Of a stretch of DNA of 64,000 nucleotides, positions 29,710 through 44,275 are shown in pieces. The notes under the pieces were generated by a model. It was given only the letters and a program-made list of their open reading frames with translations. It was not told the origin of the DNA and did not search any database. Made by a program: the position numbers and the translations under genes. Positions within the stretch are counted from its first letter, which is position 1. Every line of letters starts with the position of its first letter. Origin of the DNA: Phallusia mammillata (taxonomy: Eukaryota); contig OZ281497.1 of NCBI GenBank assembly GCA_965637545.1, positions 18,476,001 to 18,540,000 on the forward strand. The letters are read 5' to 3'.

Positions 29710-32700
29710 ATGGACACGAATGAGGGCACAAGATCAGTAGGCAAACTTGATAACTTAGACGAAAAAGAAGCGAGCAGCAGAAATGTTGCTCAAAGTAGCC
29801 CGACGACCCCACCGAAAACTCCAAAACGGAGGGGCAGCAAAACTCTTCGAAACCTCGCGCGAAGGGGCAGTTCAATGTCAATACTGAAACTCCGTTCACC
29901 AACTCATTCAAATTTACCCGAAAACCCTGTTATAGAAGGTATGCCTTGCATGTACTGTTGAAATGTTTGTTATTTCGGTTGAAAAACAACCTGTTTATAT
30001 TTTGTTTGCAAGCAGATTTTTTTCACCAGCTTGATCGAAACCGGAACTTTTGAACTTTTGCGCTATAGGGCATCATGTGCCACCATAATGCAGTTTGTTC
30101 ACAGATATTTTCAGACCGCTTTCATTTATCGCCTAAATAACCTTGCTTTCAACATCTTGTAAGTTTTGGTAGCTATAACTAACATTTTTGTCATTGCAGA
30201 AAGTGTAGATGAAGTGGATGGAATTTTGAAGAAGAATAAGCCAGAAAAGTTAAAAAAGAACAAGGTAAATGTGTCTGTGTCGGATTTGTCCTGCAACAAT
30301 TGCTAAACACTTAGTATTTTAGAATTCACAAAAGCCCGTATCCGGCGAGGAACCGCCATTAACAACACCAACTAAAAGGCCCAAGTTTCTGAGAGCATTT
30401 AGCAGTCCGAATCTAAAAAAGGATCATCAGGGTCAAAGCATCGATTTCTCACCCATAGACACGGTTCAAGAGGATGCTGCTGAAAATGAAATTATATTTG
30501 AACCCAAACTTCCATCTCCAGATGTTCAGGATTTTAACTATGAAGGTATTTATACTTTTTGTTTTGTTGTTTATCAAGTTTTGGTAGTGTATAGCAGTGG
30601 TCGGCAACCGCCTGTCCGCGAGAAGTTCGTTACCACGTCTTTTCAAGGTTGTCCGCGATAATTTTCCGGTTTCGAAAACGGTTCGCAGTGCCAAAAAGGT
30701 TGCCGACCCCTGGTATATAGCATTCGTGTTTCATTAGGTATGATTGTGTTTTTACACAGTCGGTTTAAACCCTGCAAAGCCATAAAAGCACTTGAACTTG
30801 GTTGCCCGGTACAGGAACAGACTCGTGACCACATTGTCGATGAGTGCATGCAGAGCGAAGCGAGTCTGATTGCCGAAATTATTCCTGGTTTATTTGCAAT
30901 GCTTTAATAGAAGTATTCTATTAATAGAAGACGACCTTGATAGTTAATCCAGCTTTTCGTTAATGGTGTTTAGCAAATGAAAAAGTGTTCTTCGGAAAAC
31001 CATTATACCTGTACTGATATGAAAAGGAAAACGTTTATTTACAGAGGTGCTGGCGGAAACCCATAAGGTCGAGGCAGAAAAGGAGTACGCTGGAACAGAA
31101 AAGACCCAGCCTTTTACTTCGGAATATGGAAAGGCAGATATAGACTCGGTCGAATATGGCCATGATATGATTATTCAAGAAATTGAAACTGGTTTTTTTC
31201 TTGGACCTGTTTTAAGGTTGGTTATTGCAAATTGGATTTGCCCCGGTATCATACCCTCCACATACAAAACAAGAAACAGATAAATACATTTTGTTTTAAA
31301 AGTTATTCAAACATACCCCCACTTTTTTGTTGTTAAACAAACAGTCTAACATAAGATACTAGATTTCAGGTGTACAGACTAAAACCATAAACTTTTCAAT
31401 TGAAATCACTACTTTTTTGGTGAAAAGTGAAATCTTTTTAGCGCCGTTAGCGGAAATTTTGTCAACGCCGCTGCGTTCATCGACACTGGACTGTCGACAC
31501 TTGTTTCTTTTTTTCTCCCTGAGAGCTGAGATAAGGCCGGGAGCGTCAGATCCTTCGTTTGTTTATTTTGGTTTGGTGTTTAGTTTTACTTATTGTTCGG
31601 TACGGTTGCCCATTGAGGACTTAGGGAAAAAAAGTTGTCTAAAATTATTAAATTACAATGTTATTGGGAGGAGACATTTTTGCTTTCGTATTTTCCCAGT
31701 TTATTTACCTCGACAGTCGACACCAAATGTAATTAATGGACCGGGTTATTTTTGGCTAGATTAGTTTTTCACACTTACAGCCGCCAGCAAGGCTTACTTT
31801 ACTTTGAAGAGTATTAAAAAAATCTTTTTCAGTAGTATGCATGTCTGAATTGTGAAACAACCAGTAGCTGAATGCCTATAAATAGCTGAGTACCCCAAAG
31901 CCCTCTAAAGTTACAAAGACTATAACCGCGTTCTGCTTATTAATGTTAATTAGGTAAAACTGGCCTAAATCATGTCAGGTTTCAAAAAGGGGTGGTTGAA
32001 CAACCAGTTCTAGTTAGAATTATTACAAGAAATTTTACAATGGAGTATGCTGATCAAGAAAAGTCTCCAGAACCTGTTCAAGAACAGGAAACTAAAACTG
32101 ACCGTGAACATGAACGTATCCTAAATGAAATAGAAACTACAGATACAGCATTCATAGGTGCTTCTCTGAGGTAATTGAAAGACAAATCCAGCTTAAAGAT
32201 TTAAACTTGAAGATTGTAAAGTTTTGGCTTTTCCAGTAGAGGAACAAAACTAAGACAAACACTAGCTGTAAAAACATTGTAAAACATCAAGTTCCATGCT
32301 AGGGTTTATTAGTTTTACCAGTAACAAATCTAATGTGTAAAATAACAGCACTAATACTACTTCATTAGAGCATTCTGAGCTTTCACTATCACTTTCATTG
32401 GAAATGTTCGAAGTAGATTCACTGTTGCATCAAACTAAAAATACTTATTACACTTATCAGTCAACTGATTAAATAAGAGATACCATGATTATATTGCTGC
32501 GGATATTTGGCCTGTCAGACAATTACCGCAAGGTTGATTCACAAATTTAAATTTTATTTGTATAAGTCTATATATTGACCACATGAAAGACAAGTAGTAG
32601 GAAAGATTGATATGATTGTAGGAAAAATCTGGTCGAATAGTGCTAGTGTTTAAGCATCAAATTATAGCTGAACTTTTCTTTATGTTTAAAGGGCGGTTTA

Positions 32701-35700
32701 TGAGGGAAATGACCACAGGAAATTCTTGGAACGACTTGAAAATCGAATAAAGCAGCATGACCGTGACATCGAAAGGATGTGCAATTTTCATTATCAAGGT
32801 TTTATTGAGTCCATCACTGAACTAATAAATGTTCGGACCGATGCAGACAAGCTCAAAGTAAGAAATACTTAATACTAGATTGGATTAACTGTTGTACTAA
32901 CATTTGCATGCTTTTGTGTGTGTTTTTTTCATTAGCATATTTTTGTCAATGAAAATTTTTGTGTTAACTGTTTTCAATCTGATGAATAGATACCAAAAAT
33001 AAACAAAAACACCTATTTATGTTTTGTGTAGGCACAAACGCTCATAATCAACAAAGAGCTTCAAGAGTCTGGAAAGGAGGTTGCTAGAAAAAGTGAAGAT
33101 CTTATTCAATCTCGTTTACAACAGTGCAATGTTGCTTCTGCTATAGAGAAGTTAACTGTTTGTCTGCCTGTTTTGCAAATGTATGCAAAAATGTGTGAAC
33201 AGATGAAAGCTCGAAGGTGGGTGACAAAGACAAACAAACAATAAGATTATTCGTCTTGTGGCTCTTGCCTTAAGTGTTGTGTATACACATAGTTATCATA
33301 AGGATGTGTTACCTTCAGTTTGTCTTATGAATATGTTTTTCATTTTTTTAGATATTATTCTGCTTTAAAAACACTGGAACAATTGGAACATACTTACCTA
33401 CCCCGGGTTTACTCATATCGTTTTTGTGACATAATGTTGACCAACATTCCAAAGATACGTGAGCAAATAAAAGAAGTCTCCATGTCTGAACTTAAAGACT
33501 TCCTGGAAAATGTTCGAAAAAATTCTCACAAAATTGGCATGGTTGCCATGAAACAGGTTAGTGTGTTTTACAAGAAAATTTATATGTTTTTTTGGAAGAA
33601 TTAGTGTCATCTTCTTTCATCATTCATTTGAACTTTTTTGTGTACTTACTTTGTTCTTCACATATTTAGCTTACCTATGGCAGATAACTTACAATAGACT
33701 TATCATGCACATTACATGTTTGTGCCCACAAAACAAGGATAAAAATGAAAGAAACAACAAACCATAATGTATTTTGAGCAGCACTATTTTGGTTTAGGTG
33801 GAAAAAGAACACAACTTGGAGAGTCCATGTAGTGAATCAACAAAACAAGCAAACCCGAATCAGAAACAGTCAACAGATGATGAAAGTGCTGTTGAAGCAG
33901 ATCGCCCCACTGCCAGGATAAAACCCACCCAAAGTGAAACTGTAAAAAATCACATAAACACAAAAAAGTCTAAACCGACCAAACTAAAACAAGAGTCCAA
34001 AAATACCAACCAGTCAGCTTCACCTAAGCATAGACCAAGGATTAATCCATTTGATGACCTTTCTGACGAAGAGTCACCAGTGGTTATGGACAATCGAAAT
34101 CCCTTTGATGAGGACACTAACCCTTTCGGAAGTGAAACTGTTGAGCATAACTCCAACCCATTCCTAGATCAAGAATCCTCAGATATTCCTGAAACTGACA
34201 ATTCCCAGCAAGTGAATGGTTATAATCCGTTTGCCATTGAACCATTAAAACAGGAGCCAAAAAGCCTTCTTGTGGACACAACAGAACTACTAAAAGGTCT
34301 CAACTATGAGGTAAGGTTTCAGTTGTTTGTTGAAATTAAATAAAAAAACACCTTATGTGATAAATTTATAAATATATATATAGTTTTCAAAGTAAAACAA
34401 ATAGCGACCTTGACAGTGCCATTTTCTTGTTACTTTATACATGTCTGTTTGGGAACCACAACAGAATAAGCCCATGCTGTTGTCTCAGTTAAGGTATGGC
34501 TATTTTTTTGGCCGGTGGTAAACAACGCTCAAACAAGCAGCGAAGCATCAGATACTGTTTCTTATTTCTGTTTTTTCCCTTGCAAACAAACCTTAACATT
34601 AACTTATTGACATAATTTACAATGAAAATAAACCTCCACCATATTTGGTAAAATGCCCTGCCCAACAATCTTTATTACTTCCCTTGAACAAAATTTATTC
34701 CAAGCTTTTGGAAAACTATTCATTTATATTGCGAGAATTTTCACACAGTCACAGGAAGACACAAATCCATTTCTTGAACCGGATACAGCTTCCTCTCACG
34801 ACCCTATAGAGTCAGTAAACACAGATCAGCCAAAAGACAGTGAACCAGAGGGAAATCCATTTTTAGAAGATGAAGAGAAACAGTCAGTAGTTATTCCACG
34901 TTCTGAAAACGATTCCAAACCAGTTAAAACTGCTGAGCCCCAGTCAATTGCAGATATTACCAACAATCCTTCTTTGGAAAGCAACGGTTTGGAAACAAGT
35001 GGTTCTGTTTCTCCGGGCAGTGAAGCATTGCCAATTAAAGCACCTCCAAGAAGGAAAAAGAAAAAAGCTGCCCCCAAAGTACCAGTTCCACCTGATGAAA
35101 AAACTGCTGACACAGAGAACAATAATGACAGTCCTGGTGCTGCACGGTCAACAGTAAATGTTGTTTCTGATGTAAAAACTGATAATACCAGTGCTAAACC
35201 CTTGCAAAATACAGAGAAGAAAAGTGATTCCTCTAATAAGCCTCCAGAAAGTGTTGATGGTGGTCCATCAAGTTTCCTTCATCTTGTAACTGATTTGCAA
35301 ACACAGCGTGCTTCTTTAGTTGAAGAAATGATTTTGCCTAAATGGCAGAAGACAAGAGATTGGCAAATGCCTAGAATTTATCATGTATGTTTTTTTTATA
35401 CCTTTTGGAAAATGGAGCGATCAGAATACAGAAACAATTGCAGTGATCGATAAAAAGTGATGTGATTGCAGGTTAACAATTAAAGCTGTTGCAAACTGAC
35501 TTTTGTCAACCCTTGAACATTGATTGTCAGTTCAATTTGTCTAATTGATATCGATATCAAAATTACTTCATGGAGAAAAAAAACAACATAATTTTTAACG
35601 AACACCAATTAATGAATGTTATGTATTGAGATTTTTTCAGGTGTTAATGTTGCATTTTTATAAACTCCCTAAAAATCTACATATAAATCAAGTTAAATAT

Positions 35701-38700
35701 ACAACTGCAGCTTGTCATCACACTTTAGGAATTTAACATTCTGATTATGTTAGTGTGTGCTGCAAGAGAAATTGTTTTTTTTTAACCAATTAACACTGCA
35801 ATCATCTACAGATGTCTAACCATTTACACCAGTAGTTCTTAACCGGGGTCCGGCAAAGCCGAATCAGGGGTTCGACGAAGGTATTTTTGAGGTATAATAC
35901 AAATACCAGTTTTCTTCAAACTTTAGGGTCTATAGTCGCTAAAAAATGGCATTTTTATTTGACAAATATCTTAACGCTGGAACGTTACACTAAGGCAGGG
36001 GTGCACAACCTGCGGTCGTACGGCTGCATGCCGACGCAGAGTCGAGTTTGTACGGCCCTGACGTAAATAAAACTCTTTGCTAAATATTTTGATTTTTAAT
36101 CTGCTCTAAACAGTTTTTGTGGTACAAATTAGTATTGCCAGCCTAATAACCATATGCGTCAGACTTTTTGTACGTCTATTGTGTGCAAACAAAACAGGTT
36201 CCACAAGCATCACAATATGGATTATGACATCATAAACACTTAAAGACTGATCTCCACGCTGTGCAGCTCAATCTGTGCACCAAGCTACAAATTAACCTGG
36301 GATTTTTGGGCGCTTTTAGATGGTATATATATGATATAAATCAAGTATTTTAAAACAAAAAGGCAGGTGAATGGCGGCCGTTGGTGAAATAAAAATCTAC
36401 GATGCGGCTGTCTTAGCAAAAAGGCTGTGCACACCTGCACTAAGATTTTTTTTTTTTTTTTTTTTATGTAACAAAGAGCACTGTGCGCGTTGTTCGTAAG
36501 CAGAAAAGCAACGGGATTTTGTAGGTAGCAATCTTTTTCATGTTTGTGTACAAATGAAAATACAATGCTTCATTTTGGTAAAAACTTAAAATTGCCGGAA
36601 TTAAAGCAATCCTGAAACAGGTTGATTGCATTATTATTATGTCAGAATTTAACAAAATGTCAAACAGTAACTGTTGGCACTACGTTTGAACAAAAACTGA
36701 ATACGACCCACCAACCACAATGGGTTAAAAACGTATAGGATGTAACTTGAAGAATATCGTAGGGGTTCAGCCGTTATAAAAAGGTTAAGAACCACTGATT
36801 TACACACATATGTCACCACCTTTAGGTTTAGCATATGATACGACTTAACTGTGCAATGTCTGCAATAATGTACTTGCAATCAATTGAATTCTTAGGTCAT
36901 CAAAAATATATACAATACATTTATCTTCAGTGTACCAGGATGCCTACAGATGATGATTCTGACTAAAAGCAAGTCAAATATTTTAAACTTTTTTGACAAA
37001 CTGTAATATGTCATTAAGTTTGGAATTTGGTATGCAATAAAACAGAACTGGTCGTAATTGCCCAGATTGCAATCAATAAGAATTGTCTGTAATTCCACTC
37101 TATTGAATGTTTCCGGGACATTAAACTCCAATACAGTATCAATCAAAATCTAAAATACTGATTAAAAAATTCCATTTTTCATCAACTATTCTATCCGTTT
37201 AATTTTCATGAGCATATTTGGTACTTACATTTATTTTTAAATGCAGGATCTTTCGGCCTCTGATTTGGTGGATTTTTCCCCAGTATACAAATGCCTGCAC
37301 ATCTTTGGCCTTGTGGGCTCAAGGGCAGTTTTTGAATCGTACTATCGCACACAAAGGAAGAACCAAGCCAGATTGGTTCTGCAGCCTCCTGCCGTTATGA
37401 CGGACAACACAGAAACTTATGCACAGTATTTTTACCAGATTGTAGGGTAAGCAATACTGTGATAAAATTAACAGTTTTGTTTGTATTATATGAAATATGG
37501 TTTTAGGTTTTTCGTTGTTGAAGATCACGTCTTACACACTGCTCCGAATTTAATATCTAGGCAATTTATTGATGATTTGTGGGATTTGGCCATATCCAAA
37601 CTTGTGGCTGTGCTACAGGCAGACTCAGTAAGTTCCAAAAAAACATACTGCAACTGCTAGAAAATAATTAGACAACATCACATTTCTTATTTTTTTGCAG
37701 GGTTATCGTAGTGATGCTGCCTTAATGATGAATGTCAAAAACCTCATAGTGATATTTGCTGACACTCTAAAAGTAAGTTAACTATTTAGTTGCAGCATTT
37801 TGTGTATTCAGCATGTGCTGTTTCTAATTTTCATATTGGTGTCCAGTGTTTTTTTAAGGTGTTTTGGGGGACCGAAACGTTCCCCCAAATTTCTCCAGCG
37901 GTTTCCCAAAATTTGGAATTGCAACTACAGTAGAAAAGTAATGGTTGTTTCTCGCTATGTCTTGTCGATAATACGAATATAGCCTACGATCAAATAGTTC
38001 ACGGCACTGCCAGTAGCCTAATAAATAATTCGTTTAAGCAAATATGGCTATTTTTTGGTATTTAAATGAAACACTTGCGGTCTCTTAAAACTACTTAGCG
38101 GCCAAACCAAACCTTAAAAAAAAACCTGTTGGTGTCTGTTCTTCTCAAATAAACTATATTTTTGTTTTCCTTGTCATTTGAATACACTGAAGATGCCTGC
38201 ATAAGTAAAATATGTTTGTTCTGTATATGATAGCTAACTGATTTTACCCTGAAAATAAATATAATTTTTCTTGTCAATCTTTAATATTTAGTGAATGTTT
38301 TGATTATTTTAGGCATATGGCTTTTCTGTCACAAGACTTTTTACCTTGCTTATGGAGTTGCGGGATCAGTATGGTGAAATCTTACTGAAGCGATGGGCAC
38401 AAAAGTTTAATGATGTTTTTAATGAGGACAATTACACTCCTATGCTTGTGGAGAGTGAAAGTCAGGAACAAATGGTCCTCAGTTCATTTCCTTATGAAGG
38501 TTAGTTGCTGTCTGTATTATGCAGGAATGAACTTTGTGCCCCTATTGTATCAACATGAAATTGTTTGCACTGAACCATTGTATGGTTGGTATTTGCTTAG
38601 TGGTGCATTATTAGTAATGTTGACTTACAGCATTATATTGTACATGCCAATCCACCTAGTTCACAGCACAACAGTACCAACTGTGCCAAGTTTTTTTTTT

Positions 38701-41700
38701 ATGGGTCCCCTTCTATGAAGGGGACACATTGTTTTTGTCCGTATTTTTTTTCTTTTTTTCTTTTTTCTGTCTAACGCTGGTTTGTTAAACACGTTTGGTC
38801 AAGAAAGAGTGCTCCAAATTTAATGAAATTTACACAAATGTTAGTTATTAATCCAAATTTGATCCTCCTGAAGTTTGACCCCAAATGACCCAGCGGTTCA
38901 CCCGCAGGCCCCCAAAACGTATTTTTTTAAAAACGGCTGTACTGACTAAAGTACATCATCTCTGAGTGATATGCTGTGTTGTTTGGTGCAATATAAGATA
39001 TTTCAGAGAATTTTGTATCTTTTTTTTGATTCACCCCTTAAACCCCCAAATATTCATTTCTGTCTAACGCTGGTTTGTTAAATGCGTTTGGTCAAGAAAG
39101 AGTGCTTTACATGTATTCAAATTTGCACAGATGTTAGTTATTTCACCCATTTTACCCCTTAAACCCCCAAATAATAAGTTTTAGGCCAAAAATACAAGCC
39201 CTAATGTGCTGAAATGTTAAACAATTGTTTGCAGTAGGTTATTCGTTCAGTACTTAAAATTTTGCCTTAATCAGCCAAATAGTTACTTTTACAGCCCATA
39301 ATATGTGTACACGTTCAGTCAGATAGAAGTCTCAACTCTCAAGGGAGTAATTCACTTGTTTACGATTAAGGCGGGTGAATGCAGCGGGATTTCTCAGCTT
39401 GACATCCGGACAGGCGTTTTACGAGACAGTCGTTTCGGTGATTAGAAATCAGCTGTTTTTGCGCAGCTATGCTATGTCGTTTTATTGAGTATCAAGCACA
39501 TTTTCAGTTGTGGAAAATTGTGTTAAAAACTGACCTTGAACGACAATATCAAGGTCAAAGCATGAGATTAAGTTAAAAGTTTTTTCCCCGTTCTTATGTA
39601 CTGTTTTTTTTGTAATTATATGACAATAATGATGCAAAAAGAATACGGACAAAACTTTTAAAGCTGGGTTATTGCTAAAGTTGGTTAAGTTTTTTCTTAA
39701 GAATCTAAAAATAACCAGTACGTTAAATCCGCACAAACACGCGTGTGGGGACCCATCTGTTTTTGCTTGCAAAAACAATCATATATGTAGATCAAATGGT
39801 GTGTATAGTAAATTGGTAAATATCGTATAGAATATATAAAATGGAAGTATATCAGAAAGCCACCTTTCTAGTTTTACTGGTGATTGCACCAAACCTTAAT
39901 TCAAATATCCTCCTCCCCACACAAATATTAAGAAAAGATAGTTTGCATGTAGTTTTCTGTTGATAAAGTGTGGTGTGTTTTTATTTTGATCTTGTAATTG
40001 GCACAGTACTGTTATTTTTCTCTACTGACAGATCCAAACTTTGAAAATGCAATTTACCCTAAAAAGCTGCCTTTCTCCAAATTTGTGCCTCGAATATACA
40101 ACGAAATCAAGCAATTTATCCTTGCCTGCCTCAAGTACTGTGAGGACCTGCACCTCAGGTCAGTCTGTGTTTTTTGTATTCTTGGAGCTGCCTCAGTTTC
40201 CTTCCTGGTTTAACCACAATAGGGTGTGTAGAAGAATGCCAATGCAATGCACCCTGTAATGTCAAGGACACTAACTGGCTTTTACACAATTTTGCACTTT
40301 GTGGTTCTACAGTAAAGCACAGGACAGTTCAAAGATGAGGCACATTTTTACTACTGTACAGTTTATAGTTAATGCTTTTCTATGTATTTAAACGCTTTTC
40401 TATCCATTCTTACAGTCATAAATTTCAAAGACATGAGATTGGTAAAACTTAATGTTCTTTGTGAATAAGATAACATGCATATAATTTGAGACAACAGTAC
40501 TAAAAATGATTTTTTATATACAATCAAGTGTAATACAGTCAACGACAATGCTACTTAACTGTTGTTTTTAGCATTTTAATCATGAGCCAATTAATAAATA
40601 CTCACATGGTCTAGCAATAACAGTGTTTGTTTGCCATGCTGCAAGCCCATACATTCTACCATGCCATTTTTATCATTACAGTTCGACGGAAGTGGATGAC
40701 ATGATCAGAAAATCAACAAACCTGCTGCTAACACGGACGCTGGCATCCGGCCTTCAGACCTTGGTGCAGAAACCTTCTCTAGGTCTTACTGAGGTAAGCC
40801 TAGGGCGACATTTCAAACACTTCGTTTGCAGCAAGCAGCGAAAACTTTCCAAACCACGTAAAAACTACCTTCTTACAAATGCGTAGTTATTACGTACGCT
40901 CATTTACAAACATGTGTTAAATTTTGTGAATGAATTACACAAAATATATTTTGGCTTCTGCATCGAGGAAAGGCAATGCCACATTGACCAACTTGTATAT
41001 GGATTGCCGACTTTAATTCGGTGCACGTTCGTGGAGAGTCTGGCTTGTGTGGAAGTTTAGTGTCAATTGGGAAGCATAAGTGTTAGGTTGGAGTATTCTC
41101 ACATTACAAACCAGTGGTTGCGCCTAAACTGTTTAGAAATTAGTAGGGATGTGCCAAAACTGCAAATGTTCTGTTTGGTCGAGCACCGAGCATCTCACTT
41201 TAATCCCTAGAAATTAGCAATTTTCTTTAGAACGTGACTTGCTTTTTAGCTGGTACAAATTATTGTGAACACGACACACTTGGAGAACTCGTGTCGTCAC
41301 GTTGAGGAGTTTGTCCACTCGATCACTGGAGTCAGAGTGGGAAGCGCACACTCTGCAAAGTTGGTCGGAGTTTCAACGTTCAAAGACGCGCGGAACGGAA
41401 CAGAATCTCAGGTGAGGCATCTTCTGTCGCAAATACGATTCGGTACTGAAAAAAATATTTGTGTTTGCCAAAAATCGACGTTCTGACTGTGAAAGAAATA
41501 GGTGTTACAACTGGACGACTTACTTTAGGGAATTTGGACCAAGAACTGTTTAAATTGCTAATGTCTTCTTGGGGTTCCGTATTGGCTAACATTAAACCAT
41601 GATCAACGCATAAAGGAAATACTGGCATTGTTGTGATGAAGGTCATACATCACGCTGAAATATTAACCTCAAACTTGTTGTGGGTTTGGCATATGCTAAA

Positions 41701-44275
41701 GAACGTTGCTGATATCTCAATTTGCGACCATGTTTCCTGAATATGTCTTTGTTTTCGGAGAATCGGCCGCGGGACAACATGTTGTGTATGAATTGTATCT
41801 TTGTTAGTTTATTGCTCAAACATTTGAAAATGCACATTTCAGTGTTACAGAGGGTTGAGAACTTTTTAATTTTCATTTTGTGGAATGATAACTAGTTTCA
41901 AAGCCGAAAACGTGGCAGTGAAATTTCTCCACTATGTTTACTGTAAGAATGAAAATCCTTGCTTCTCCACAGATGTCCTGAACATTTCAATTTTGGATAT
42001 GTTGACAGGCATACACCCTCATAAAGTATTTTTAACGACATTTGTGAATATCCCATGGGTGATAATGACGATCAAATAATACGCCTTCATTTATTTGTAC
42101 CGTTTGATTACATTGTATTTGAAAAACCGAGCATGTTTTTCAACATGTTTATGTTCCAGTGATCAATGTTTGAGCACGTGAACGTTTATTTACACTGTGG
42201 CCTCATTTAACGCAGATATACAACAAGCTGAACAGTAAGATTGATGAGTTTTTCGAGCTTGCTGAGTATGATTGGAACATGAAAGAACCGCGTGGAAGGG
42301 CAAGCAGATATTTGCTCGATCTCATCGCCTTCCTGCAACACAACTTCGAAGTCTTTACCAACCTTCCGGTATTGTTTCTGCTGCGCATACGTGAAATGTC
42401 AAAATTTCTGTAATAATCTACTACGCTCTTAACATTTTGTTGTGTTGTGGGATGTGTTGTTCACTACAAACCCCAAACAAAACTTCTTGCAAAATACTTT
42501 TTGGTTTAAAGTAAAATAACAATTACAGAGGATTTAAACTTTTTTAAAAGTATTTTGTCAAACGTTTGTTTTGAACCGTCAAAGCAAATTGAGGTAAAAA
42601 AATGGCCTTTGGGTATGTAGTGTTGCGTTCCTCATTTTATCGGCCAATCTGTGCCTTTGTTTAAAACTATTTGTGTTTCCACAGTCAAATGTTGCACAAA
42701 CTGCCTGTATGTCGGCATGTCGTCATATCAGCACGAGTTTAATGGAACTGATTATGGATCGCGACATTAAGCTCATCACCATGGCAGCTCTGCAACAATT
42801 TAACCTGGATGTGATGCAATGTGAACGTGAGTCGAAAAAAATCAGCGGTTATGACGTAATGAGTGGTATTGGTCCACTTTACATATAATATGAAAGAATG
42901 GCAAAAGAGGGACTAATCTGCATCTATTTTTTAGCACTTTTCTATACGGTGGCATAGCTAACCCATCTACTGAACTGTAATACCCTACAAGGCTACAAGA
43001 AATAAATTTGTTTGTATAGTGTTTGGATATTTTAATGGTGAAAATAACGGCCCAAATAGATGTAAAAAGCGACATGCTTTATTGTTTAAACGTTTCGGCA
43101 AATGCTCATGCCATCATCAGTGATATAAAGGCCACATCAGTTACACCCGTTTATATACACTTGTCTTTTTTATGTAGCCTTGTATAGACATGGAAACTTA
43201 AATCTTCATAGGCTTTTATACATTTGCTCATAGCATTTTAAAGCAACCAAGTCGTTTCGTTTCTAGTTTTCTCCAACTCGGAACCGGTTCCAGGCTTCCA
43301 GGATGGAGCTCTGCAAATGAGTTTCGTCGAGTTGCGTCAACTTCTCGATCTCTTCCTCTCATGGGATTGGTCATCGTATTTGGCCGATTACGGCAGCGGA
43401 AACAGCAAATATCTTCGCGTCAACCCCGGCACCGCGCTCAATTTGTTAGAGAAGTATGTTTTTGTGTCACTAGTTTGGGGAACATTCCCATGTTAGCATG
43501 GGTTTTTATATCAAATTGTTTCCTTTAATGAATTGTATATTCTCATGCTGTCCGACAATAGCGGCACTGTCACATGTAAATCTTAACATAGGCCTACAGG
43601 TTATATCGAACCAGTTTCTTTACATGATTCGGTAAGATCAGTGGTTCACAACTCATTCAGTTTGTGGACCACTAGTTGAAATGAAAGAATGTCGTGGACC
43701 ATTCGTTTTTTAAGTTTTTGAATAATGCATTTACAACAAGCTTTTTAGCTTAAAAAATATTTTTACAAAACCGAATTTTTATCAGTGACAAAATGATTGA
43801 CAACCATTTTGACATCACTATTCTACTTATAATATGCAACAAACTTGCGTTTATCACCAATCTCCCAAATATCATCATAGACCACATTTGGTGTATGGAC
43901 TACCAGTTGAAAACCACTTGTTTAGTAGTTTTTTTCTGCGCATATAGACAAGGGCATTGGGTCAAATATGGACTACTGACCACCGGGTGATAAACAAACA
44001 CGCACTCGAACAAATCTACTTGACAGCGTTGACCACATGGCGACCGTCGCTTGTTTGTTGTCACAGTCGACAGTCCTTGTGACGTCAAATATTCCAAAAA
44101 CAGTTACGTAACCCGGAGCATCGGAATGTTGGGAGTAAAACACTTTGTTTTTAGAATCAAGGAGGAAAGGGGCCATCGAAACATTTTCACATCCTTAAGC
44201 AAACAAGAACGCGAGAAAAAGAAGCTTCTGGAAACAGTTGTAAGGCAGCTGCGCGGGATTGTAAACGGTAAGTGA
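29710..44275 (+). CDS. EXOC6: Exocyst complex component 6 (Sec15). Canonical short start at ATG 32040; alternative long N-terminus from ATG 29710; two large NPF-rich cassette exons at 33798-34310 and 34749-35384
   Basis: EHERILNEIETTDTAFIGASLR|AVYEG...HDRDIERMCNFHYQGFIESITEL, DLVDFSPVYKCLHI, YYRTQRKNQARLVLQPP, STEVDDMIRKSTNLLLTRTL, KIDEFFELAEYDW, QQFNLDVMQCE, LRQLLDLFLSWDWSSYLADYG, KKKLLETVVRQLRGIVNGK*. Confidence 0.95.
30595..30712. mobile_element. 118-bp hAT-type MITE in an EXOC6 5' intron
   Basis: TIRs CAGTGGTCGGCAACC / GGTTGCCGACCCCTG (14/15 match); 8-bp flanks GTGTATAG / GTATATAG (7/8, TSD-like). Confidence 0.85.
35830..36797. mobile_element. 968-bp non-autonomous hAT element containing a nested MITE
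   Basis: TIRs CAGTAGTTCTTAACC / GGTTAAGAACCACTG (14/15); perfect 8-bp TSD ATTTACAC at 35822-35829 and 36798-36805. Confidence 0.9.
35996..36437. mobile_element. 442-bp hAT-type MITE nested in the element above
   Basis: TIRs CAGGGGTGCACAACC / GGCTGTGCACACCTG; flanks CACTAAGG / CACTAAGA (7/8); a T20 run follows at 36446-36465. Confidence 0.85.
38701..39360. mobile_element. Probable non-autonomous repeat (Helentron/DINE-1-like organisation) in an EXOC6 intron; right end approximate
   Basis: Begins after a T run with the hairpin GTCCCCTTC-TAT-GAAGGGGAC (38705-38725). Internal direct repeats of about 49 nt at 38765 and 39058 (2 mismatches) and 20 nt ACCCCTTAAACCCCCAAATA at about 39033 and 39154. 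Family assignment is inference. Confidence 0.45.
43639..43920. mobile_element. Possible degraded hAT-type MITE
   Basis: Ends CAGTGGTTCACAACT / AGTTGAAAACCACTTG resemble the other hAT TIRs in the window; no TSD found. Confidence 0.4.

What the first reader, a model, noticed from the sequence alone, without database searches (positions are those of the whole stretch)
33798..35384. Exocyst Sec15 carries a skippable insert of about 380 aa with seven NPF motifs
Between KIGMVAMKQ and DLSASDLVDFSPVY, a linker of only about 60 aa in human, lie two exons of 513 and 636 nt. Both are phase 0-0, so each can be skipped without a frameshift. They encode INPFDD, RNPFDED, TNPFGS, SNPFLD, YNPFAI, TNPFLE and GNPFLEDEE. 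NPF is the established ligand of EH domains, and NPF followed by acidic residues is the preference of the EHD1-4 recycling ATPases. Sec15 is a Rab11 effector. The inference is a splice-switchable direct link between the exocyst and EH-domain endocytic/recycling machinery (EHD, Eps15, intersectin), which I do not know to be described for Sec15. A PPRRKKKK basic patch and a PKVPVPP Pro motif are also present.
Basis: partly seen in the sequence, partly recalled or inferred. Interest (0 to 1): 0.75.

Follow-up and report, generated by a model that had tools for sequence, protein, structure and literature searches.

The report
NPF-rich linker exons in sea-squirt Sec15
In this sea squirt and two related species, the flexible linker of the exocyst subunit Sec15 is encoded by an exon that the assembled transcripts always include and that carries five strictly conserved NPF motifs (the classic docking sites for EH-domain trafficking proteins), followed by a rarer optional exon; this points to an undescribed but untested direct tie between the exocyst and the endocytic-recycling machinery.

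Summary
The sequence features are real. Exon A (33798-34310, 171 codons) and exon B (34749-35384, 212 codons) are open, phase 0-0 and GT..AG-bounded. They carry 5 + 2 NPF motifs, against 0.07 expected from shuffles.

RNA-like contigs from four studies splice exon A into the Sec15/EXOC6 mRNA on both sides, so it is not a nested gene. In all four runs the gene-spanning contig includes exon A and skips exon B. Exon B appears only in short separate contigs, with one 34310>34749 joint. Exon A therefore behaves as a constitutive linker exon, and only exon B as a cassette.

Two other species, with unalignable introns, have the same exon A in the same place. All 15 NPF residues are invariant although overall identity falls to 35-39% (P about 3e-8; dN/dS 0.14).

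Exon B is also conserved in the more distant species. There its NPFs are absent; what is kept is a PPRRKK patch and a 30-residue C-terminal helix/Trp motif.

AlphaFold gives no fold for exon A. I found no paper reporting NPFs in Sec15.

EH-domain (EHD-type) binding is a well-motivated inference and was not tested.

The parts
33352..33556 (+). Last exon of the Sec15 N-terminal domain. It ends with ...KIGMVAMKQ in phase 0.
   Evidence: Pfam PF20651 EXOC6_Sec15_N, E 3.2e-21. Joints 33216>33352 and 33556>33798 appear in 4 runs. Splice context.
33798..34310 (+). Exon A: a 171-aa acidic, disordered linker exon with five NPF motifs, included in every gene-spanning contig.
   Evidence: Orthologues P0001 (68% identity) and P0002 (about 37%) share the VEKE...NYE|gt boundaries. 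dN/dS is 0.14. AF2 gives pLDDT 57 and no secondary-structure elements.
34044..34052 (+). NPF 1 (RINPFDDLSDEE). The following S-D-E is also invariant and resembles a CK2 site.
34098..34127 (+). NPF 2 and NPF 3 (RNPFDEDTNPFGSE), a tandem pair seven residues apart.
   Evidence: Invariant N-P-F in all three species.
34155..34163 (+). NPF 4 (SNPFLDQE).
34224..34232 (+). NPF 5 (YNPFAIE).
34749..35384 (+). Exon B: a 212-aa optional cassette exon, phase 0-0, skipped in the main contig of all four runs.
   Evidence: Joint 34310>34749 in run X1, and short contigs confined to 34747-35388 in X1, X6 and X18. Its words are held at 0.14-0.71 by RNA-like runs of 4 studies. An orthologous open frame ends at the same ...PRIYH|gt donor in L002-L006.
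34764..34772 (+). NPF 6 (TNPFLEPD). Not conserved in the third species.
34854..34862 (+). NPF 7 (GNPFLEDEE). Not conserved in the third species.
35043..35093 (+). PPRRKKKK basic patch followed by AAPKVPVPP, which fits [RK]xxPxxP.
   Evidence: A PPRRKK patch is also present in the third species, though MAFFT does not align the two copies.
35265..35384 (+). Conserved C-terminal module of exon B: a predicted helix (residues 173-195), then P.WQKTR.W.MPRIYH. Its partner is unknown.
   Evidence: 23 of the last 30 residues are identical to the third species, against about 28% over the whole exon. AF2 predicts a helix with pLDDT 70-84. No Pfam or Atlas match.
37247..37446 (+). Next constitutive exon (DLSASDLVDFSPVY...), the start of the conserved Sec15 rod.
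   Evidence: Joints 34310>37247 and 37446>37507 in 4 runs. In-frame translation.

Best explanation
What is shown:
- This is the single Sec15/EXOC6 exocyst gene of an ascidian, on the + strand at about 32040-44275.
- The variable linker between its N-terminal domain and its helical rod is encoded by exon A.
- Exon A is disordered and acidic, is included in all four gene-spanning contigs, and carries five NPF tripeptides held invariant across three species while the rest of the exon diverges to about 35% identity.
- A second, optional cassette exon (B) can lengthen the linker by 212 aa.

What is inferred:
- The NPF array is a multivalent ligand for EH domains. The acidic residues after most NPFs favour the C-terminal EH domain of EHD/RME-1-type recycling ATPases; Eps15, intersectin or REPS-type EH proteins are also possible.
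- It would tie the Rab11-effector subunit of the exocyst directly to recycling-endosome tubules or endocytic sites, as NPF-acidic motifs do in Rab11-FIP2, Rabenosyn-5 and MICAL-L1.
- Exon B is not mainly an NPF switch. Its conserved content is a PPRRKK basic/proline patch and a C-terminal helix plus Trp-rich motif, which probably bring in a different, unknown partner or an intramolecular contact in a minor isoform.
For: Gene identity:
- Pfam Sec15_N and Sec15_C hits.

Splicing:
- Single contigs in four runs from four studies join 33556>33798 and 34310>37247.
- Joint 34310>34749 was seen once. Exon-B contigs stop at the exon borders, and the flanking introns have no coverage.
- Exon B words occur in RNA-like runs of 4 studies.

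Selection:
- Introns are unalignable with the second species while the exons align.
- Exon A has dN/dS 0.14 at pS 0.64.
- All 15 NPF columns are among the 54 invariant columns of 157, hypergeometric P = 2.6e-8.
- Acidic residues follow the NPFs in all three species.
- The NPF count is 7 against 0.07 expected.

Disorder:
- AF2 finds no secondary-structure elements in exon A.
- Exon B is disordered apart from helix 173-195.

Exon B conservation:
- A 279-codon open frame sits at the syntenic place in the third species and ends at the same donor.

Known rules:
- EHD EH domains prefer NPF followed by acidic residues, and several Rab effectors use this (PMC13282721).
- Sec15/EXOC6 binds Rab11 (bioRxiv 10.64898/2026.09.08.749775).
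Against: - No binding data of any kind exist; EH-domain recognition is inferred from motif rules.
- NPF can be read by non-EH partners, such as WASHC5.
- Only three species could be reached, and their names are not verified.
- All RNA evidence comes from assembled contigs labelled 'RNA?', so isoform levels, tissue use and rare exon-A skipping cannot be judged.
- The 3' joint of exon B (35384>37247) was not observed, and one X18 contig runs 4 nt past the donor.
Confidence: 0.55

Rival explanations
1. The conserved NPFs are functional short motifs, but their reader is not an EH domain. It could be a non-canonical NPF binder, or another exocyst subunit or part of Sec15 itself that the linker folds back on.
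For: Non-EH NPF binders exist: WASHC5 binds an NPF motif of ENTR1. Blocks around the NPFs are also conserved, including SASP.H.PR before NPF 1, SDE after it, and NYE at the exon end. This hints at longer recognition elements.
Against: Five repeated NPFs with acidic tails in a disordered acidic segment match the canonical multivalent EH-ligand layout seen in known EHD partners. AF2 gives no hint of a folded or docking element in exon A.
Confidence: 0.2
2. The linker is only a flexible spacer that grew in this lineage, and the NPFs have no specific role.
For: Linker exons evolve fast: 35% and 27% identity against 69-91% in the neighbouring exons. No Pfam family matches either exon.
Against: All 15 NPF residues are invariant, with P = 2.6e-8 given the background conservation. 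dN/dS is 0.14. Seven NPFs are present against 0.07 expected.
Confidence: 0.05
3. Exon B is not a true coding cassette. It could be splicing noise or pre-mRNA signal, or an alternative last exon that truncates Sec15.
For: Exon B is absent from the main contig in all four runs. Only one 28-nt-sided joint (34310>34749) was seen, no 35384>37247 joint was listed, and one contig ends 4 nt into the intron. Runs of study P4 hold none of its words.
Against: An orthologous 279-codon open frame occupies the same place in the third species. Its last 30 residues are highly conserved and it ends exactly at the same in-phase GT donor. Coverage is confined to the exon, with none in the flanking introns. No other conserved piece lies in the intron.
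Confidence: 0.12
4. The NPF exons belong to a separate gene nested in a Sec15 intron.
Against: Single contigs of 2.9-3.5 kb run from Sec15_N exons through exon A into the Sec15 rod exons in four studies. The reading frame is continuous.
Confidence: 0.02

Closest known systems
Rab-effector partners of EHD1 that carry NPF-acidic motifs (Rab11-FIP2, Rabenosyn-5, Rabankyrin-5, MICAL-L1)
   Same: These are Rab effectors of the recycling pathway with NPF motifs followed by acidic clusters in disordered regions (PMC13282721). Sec15 is a Rab11 effector. Here it has NPFDDLSDEE, NPFDED and NPFLEDEE-type motifs.
   Different: There is no sequence homology: Pfam and the protein searches gave no such hit. 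The host protein is a subunit of the exocyst tethering complex. There are five to seven motifs rather than one to three. Binding is untested.
EHBP1 (EH-domain-binding protein 1)
   Same: It is a trafficking adaptor that works with Rab and Sec15 pathways, and its NPF motifs are lineage-specific. They are present in mammals and lacking in fly and worm (PMC3255984). This is a precedent for evolutionary gain or loss of an EHD link.
   Different: It is a different protein family. In EHBP1 the NPFs were shown to bind EHD1 and EHD2, whereas here nothing has been shown.
Vertebrate EXOC6/EXOC6B (Sec15) linker
   Same: The position is the same, between the N-terminal domain (...MKQ) and the DLVDFSPVY helix. 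It is also a variable, presumably disordered segment.
   Different: From my memory, not tested here, the human linker is about 60 aa and has no NPF. The ascidian linker is 171 aa (383 aa with exon B) and has 5 (7) NPFs. PDB holds no metazoan chain matching the flanking exons, so I could not compare with tools.

Membership tests
Sec15/EXOC6 exocyst subunit | N-terminal EXOC6_Sec15_N domain (PF20651) | tested here: met
   Exon 33350-33558 matches profile positions 104-170 of 170, E 3.2e-21, 76 bits against a cut-off of 27.
Sec15/EXOC6 exocyst subunit | C-terminal Sec15_C domain (PF04091) on the same transcript | tested here: met
   Five downstream exons match successive parts of PF04091, positions 5-348, with E down to 1e-13. 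Contigs join the N-terminal exons through exon A to exon 38313-38499.
Sec15/EXOC6 exocyst subunit | Binds Rab11-GTP and assembles into the exocyst | not testable with these tools
   Inferred from orthology only.
EH-domain ligands (NPF short linear motifs) | N-P-F tripeptides, usually several, above chance | tested here: met
   Seven NPFs against 0.07 expected, with 0 of 200,000 shuffles reaching that number.
EH-domain ligands (NPF short linear motifs) | Motifs lie in an accessible, disordered region | tested here: met
   For exon A, AF2 gives pLDDT 57 and no secondary-structure elements. The exon is 75% polar, charged, Pro or Gly residues, with mean hydropathy -1.34. This is a prediction only.
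EH-domain ligands (NPF short linear motifs) | Motifs conserved among orthologues | tested here: met
   Met for the five exon-A NPFs, which are invariant in 3 species, P = 2.6e-8. Not met for the two exon-B NPFs, which are absent in the third species.
EH-domain ligands (NPF short linear motifs) | Acidic residues at +1 to +3 (selectivity for EHD C-terminal EH domains) | tested here: met
   There are 1-4 Asp or Glu within +1..+6 of every NPF in all three species. The signal is strongest at NPF 1, 2 and 7. The rule is taken from PMC13282721.
EH-domain ligands (NPF short linear motifs) | Physical, NPF-dependent binding to an EH domain | not testable with these tools
   No complex prediction or binding assay is available.
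Alternative cassette exon | Length is a multiple of 3 and both the included and the skipped forms are found in RNA | tested here: inconclusive
   Both exons are phase 0-0. For exon B, skipping was seen in 4 runs and the 5' inclusion joint in 1 run, but the 3' joint was not seen. For exon A, only inclusion was seen. The data are contigs, not reads.

The most novel reading that the evidence does not exclude
Ascidian Sec15 has evolved a constitutive, multivalent NPF-acidic array that recruits EHD/RME-1-type fission ATPases, or Eps15/intersectin-type scaffolds, directly onto the exocyst. This would physically couple the scission of Rab11 recycling carriers to their tethering. A conserved optional exon would add a second, still unknown partner through its helix/WQKTR.W.MPRIYH module. 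The result would be a direct exocyst-to-EH-protein link that other animals achieve only through separate adaptors.
Probability: 0.35. Interest if true: 0.6.

Novelty: new variant of a known kind. Interest (0 to 1): 0.45.

Why it matters
NPF-to-EH-domain contacts are a standard wiring element of endocytosis and recycling, yet no exocyst subunit is known to carry them. No paper in the library reports NPFs in Sec15 or EXOC6.

A conserved five-motif array on the Rab11-binding subunit would show how a lineage can rewire trafficking by adding short motifs to a disordered linker of an otherwise rigidly conserved complex. It would also give a simple experimental handle: NPF>APA changes, or exon deletion, in embryos of Phallusia or Ciona, which are easy to inject and image.

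The scope is narrow so far, at three related species, and the function is inferred. This is a solid lead, not a discovery.

Tried and rejected
- **Nested or separate gene:** rejected by the spliced contigs.
- **Pfam on exons A and B:** no family.
- **Word search with exon B:** blank.
- **HMMER profile of exon A against 1.84 billion representatives:** only the two other species. Full-length Sec15 proteins may hide behind 50%-identity cluster representatives, so this is not evidence of absence elsewhere.
- **Metagenome scan and three-sequence profile word search:** the same two species only.
- **PDB sequence searches with the exons flanking the linker:** blank (one search was a frame slip). The claim about the human linker length therefore rests on memory.
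- **ESM Atlas with the exon-B C-terminal module:** no usable hit.
- **Other conserved coding pieces in 33557-37246:** none besides exons A and B.
- **Rfam on the high-depth intronic element 37843-38100:** blank.
- **Full-length protein searches:** I could not hand a spliced full-length protein to the search tools without typing it, so I did no region search with full-length Sec15.

Full report
**1. Observation**

Translating 33798-34310 and 34749-35384 in frame 1 gives open frames of 171 and 212 codons. The other two frames of each hold 8-25 stops.

The borders are canonical:
- ...tttag|GTGGAA and TATGAG|gtaagg for exon A
- ...cacag|TCACAG and TATCAT|gtatgt for exon B
- ...tgcag|GATCTT for the next exon

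All four boundaries are phase 0, so either exon can be dropped without a frameshift.

The seven NPF contexts, PPRRKKKK and PKVPVPP are as quoted. Seven of the eight Phe residues are in NPF. Shuffling the 383 residues gives 0.07 NPF on average, and none of 200,000 shuffles reached 7.

**2. The gene**

- The exon before exon A matches the end of Pfam EXOC6_Sec15_N (E 3e-21).
- Exons from 38346 to 43493 match successive parts of Sec15_C.
- The gene runs on the + strand from about 32040 to about 44275.
- Earlier notes of this scan name the genome as the ascidian Phallusia mammillata. I did not verify that.

**3. RNA evidence**

I laid contigs of four RNA-like runs from four studies (X1, X13, X6, X18) on 32600-38560.

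- In all four runs, one contig of 1.3-3.5 kb joins 32857>33032, 33216>33352 and 33556>33798. It then runs through the whole of exon A and joins 34310>37247, continuing into the downstream exons.
- Exon A is therefore part of the Sec15 mRNA on both sides. It is not a nested gene, and it is included in every gene-spanning contig.
- Exon B is absent from those contigs. It appears as separate short contigs confined to 34747-35388 in X1, X6 and X18.
- One X1 contig carries the 34310>34749 joint, with a 28-nt side. The introns on either side have no coverage.
- A second look-up shows exon-B words at 0.14-0.71 in RNA-like runs of four studies and 0.00 in others.
- Not seen: 33556>37247 (exon A skipped) and 35384>37247 (the exon B 3' joint). 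One X18 contig ends 4 nt beyond the exon-B donor.

All of this comes from assembled contigs whose RNA nature is the tool's guess. Levels, tissues and rare isoforms cannot be read from it.

**4. Comparative evidence**

*Second species (locus L001)*
- A word search with exon A found P0001, 68% identical over the full length, on a 3.3-kb genomic contig of another sample.
- Only exons align between L001 and the window, at 73-80% nucleotide identity. The introns do not align.
- Synonymous sites are near saturation. pS is 0.64 in exon A and 0.9 in the Sec15_N exons.
- Exon A has dN/dS 0.14. The neighbouring exons have pN 0.024.

*Third species (loci L002-L010)*
- A HMMER profile of the two sequences, run against 1.84 billion representative proteins, found one further hit, P0002 (E 3e-12).
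- P0002 lies on animal contigs inside several 'metagenome' assemblies.
- Its Sec15 core exons are 69-91% identical to the window. Exon A is 35% identical and exon B 27%. The order is the same: Sec15_N, A, B, rod.
- Exon A there has the same VEKE...NYE|gt borders.

*Conservation of the motifs*
- In the three-way alignment, 54 of 157 ungapped columns are invariant, and all 15 NPF residues are among them. The hypergeometric P is 2.6e-8.
- Acidic residues follow the NPFs in all three species. The S-D-E after NPF 1 is invariant.

*Exon B*
- Its orthologue is a 279-codon open frame ending at the same in-phase donor...MPRIYH|gt.
- It has no NPF. What is shared is a PPRRKK patch and the last 30 residues, 23 of which are identical.
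- No other coding conservation lies in 33557-37246.
- L001 ends before exon B could be reached.

**5. Structure prediction**

- Exon A, with a 3-sequence alignment, has mean pLDDT 57 and no secondary-structure element.
- Exon B has mean pLDDT 52 and is disordered, except for a helix at residues 173-195 with pLDDT 70-84. That helix lies inside the conserved C-terminal module.

**6. Interpretation**

*Shown*
- The Sec15 linker of these animals is a conserved, disordered, acidic exon with five invariant NPFs.
- A second, conserved, optional exon can follow it.

*Inferred*
- The NPF array is an EH-domain ligand.
- The rule that C-terminal EH domains of EHD proteins prefer NPF followed by acidic residues is stated in a 2026 review (PMC13282721). 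The review also lists Rab effectors that use it: Rab11-FIP2, Rabenosyn-5, Rabankyrin-5 and MICAL-L1.
- Sec15/EXOC6 binds Rab11 through its C-terminal domain. An NPF-bearing Sec15 fits that design.
- EHBP1 is a precedent for lineage-specific NPF gain or loss in a trafficking adaptor (PMC3255984).

*The 'splice switch'*
- It is not supported as stated. The conserved NPFs sit in the exon that all gene-spanning contigs include.
- The optional exon contributes only two NPFs, and these are not conserved.
- The conserved features of exon B (basic/proline patch, helix, P.WQKTR.W.MPRIYH) suggest that it adds another interaction. I could not identify it: Pfam and Atlas were blank.

*Rivals*
- A non-EH reader of the NPFs. 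Non-canonical binders exist.
- A pure spacer. This is disfavoured by the conservation statistics.
- Exon B as noise or a truncating terminal exon. This is disfavoured by its conservation up to the donor, but its 3' joint is unseen.
- A nested gene. This is refuted.

**7. Novelty**

- No paper in the searchable library links Sec15 or EXOC6 with NPF motifs.
- The EHD review mentions the exocyst only in one reference title.
- The motif class and its logic are well known, while its presence on an exocyst subunit appears undescribed. That makes it a new variant of a known kind.
- Breadth is limited to three related species in the data I could reach. Full-length annotated proteins could not be queried, because no stop-free reference of suitable length exists.
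- The human comparison (about 60 aa, no NPF) is from memory only (searches were blank).

**8. Verdict**

- The sequence observation is confirmed, with a 2-nt correction.
- The gene model is confirmed for exon A and largely for exon B.
- The 'skippable 380-aa insert' should be restated as a constitutive 171-aa NPF linker plus a minor 212-aa cassette.
- The EH-domain link is plausible and testable but unproven.
- Interest is moderate.

Noticed in passing
window 37843-38100 (intron between exons 37701-37772 and 38313-38499): This stretch has very high contig depth in all four RNA-like runs (about 230-875, against 18-76 for the host gene). Many contigs carry different flanks and internal rearrangements, as expected of a dispersed repeat or mobile element present in many transcripts. 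It has no Rfam match and only one copy in the window.
   Followed up: partly
window 35784-36380 (intron after exon B): Low-depth contigs in X1, X6 and X18 carry unrelated flanks and a replaced 60-nt segment (36015>36076). This is probably another repeat and not a Sec15 exon. There is no coding conservation with the third species.
   Followed up: partly
window 34062-34070 (S89-D90-E91 of exon A): The Ser-Asp-Glu just after the first NPF is invariant in three species. It fits a casein-kinase-2-type site, so phosphorylation might add negative charge next to the NPF. This was not tested.
   Followed up: no
L002-L010 (ENA ERZ27241785/89/99; JGI 3300001463, 3300001689 and a third JGI sample; Logan SRR5248323): Contigs filed under metagenome assemblies are clearly animal host DNA, with a Sec15 gene containing introns. 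They are probably from a tunicate related to the window's species. I could not name the species.
   Followed up: partly
window 35385-35388: One X18 contig (157 nt, 35232-35388) ends four bases into the intron after exon B instead of crossing to 37247. It may be a pre-mRNA trace or a break in the assembly graph, and it is the reason the exon-B 3' joint remains unconfirmed.
   Followed up: no
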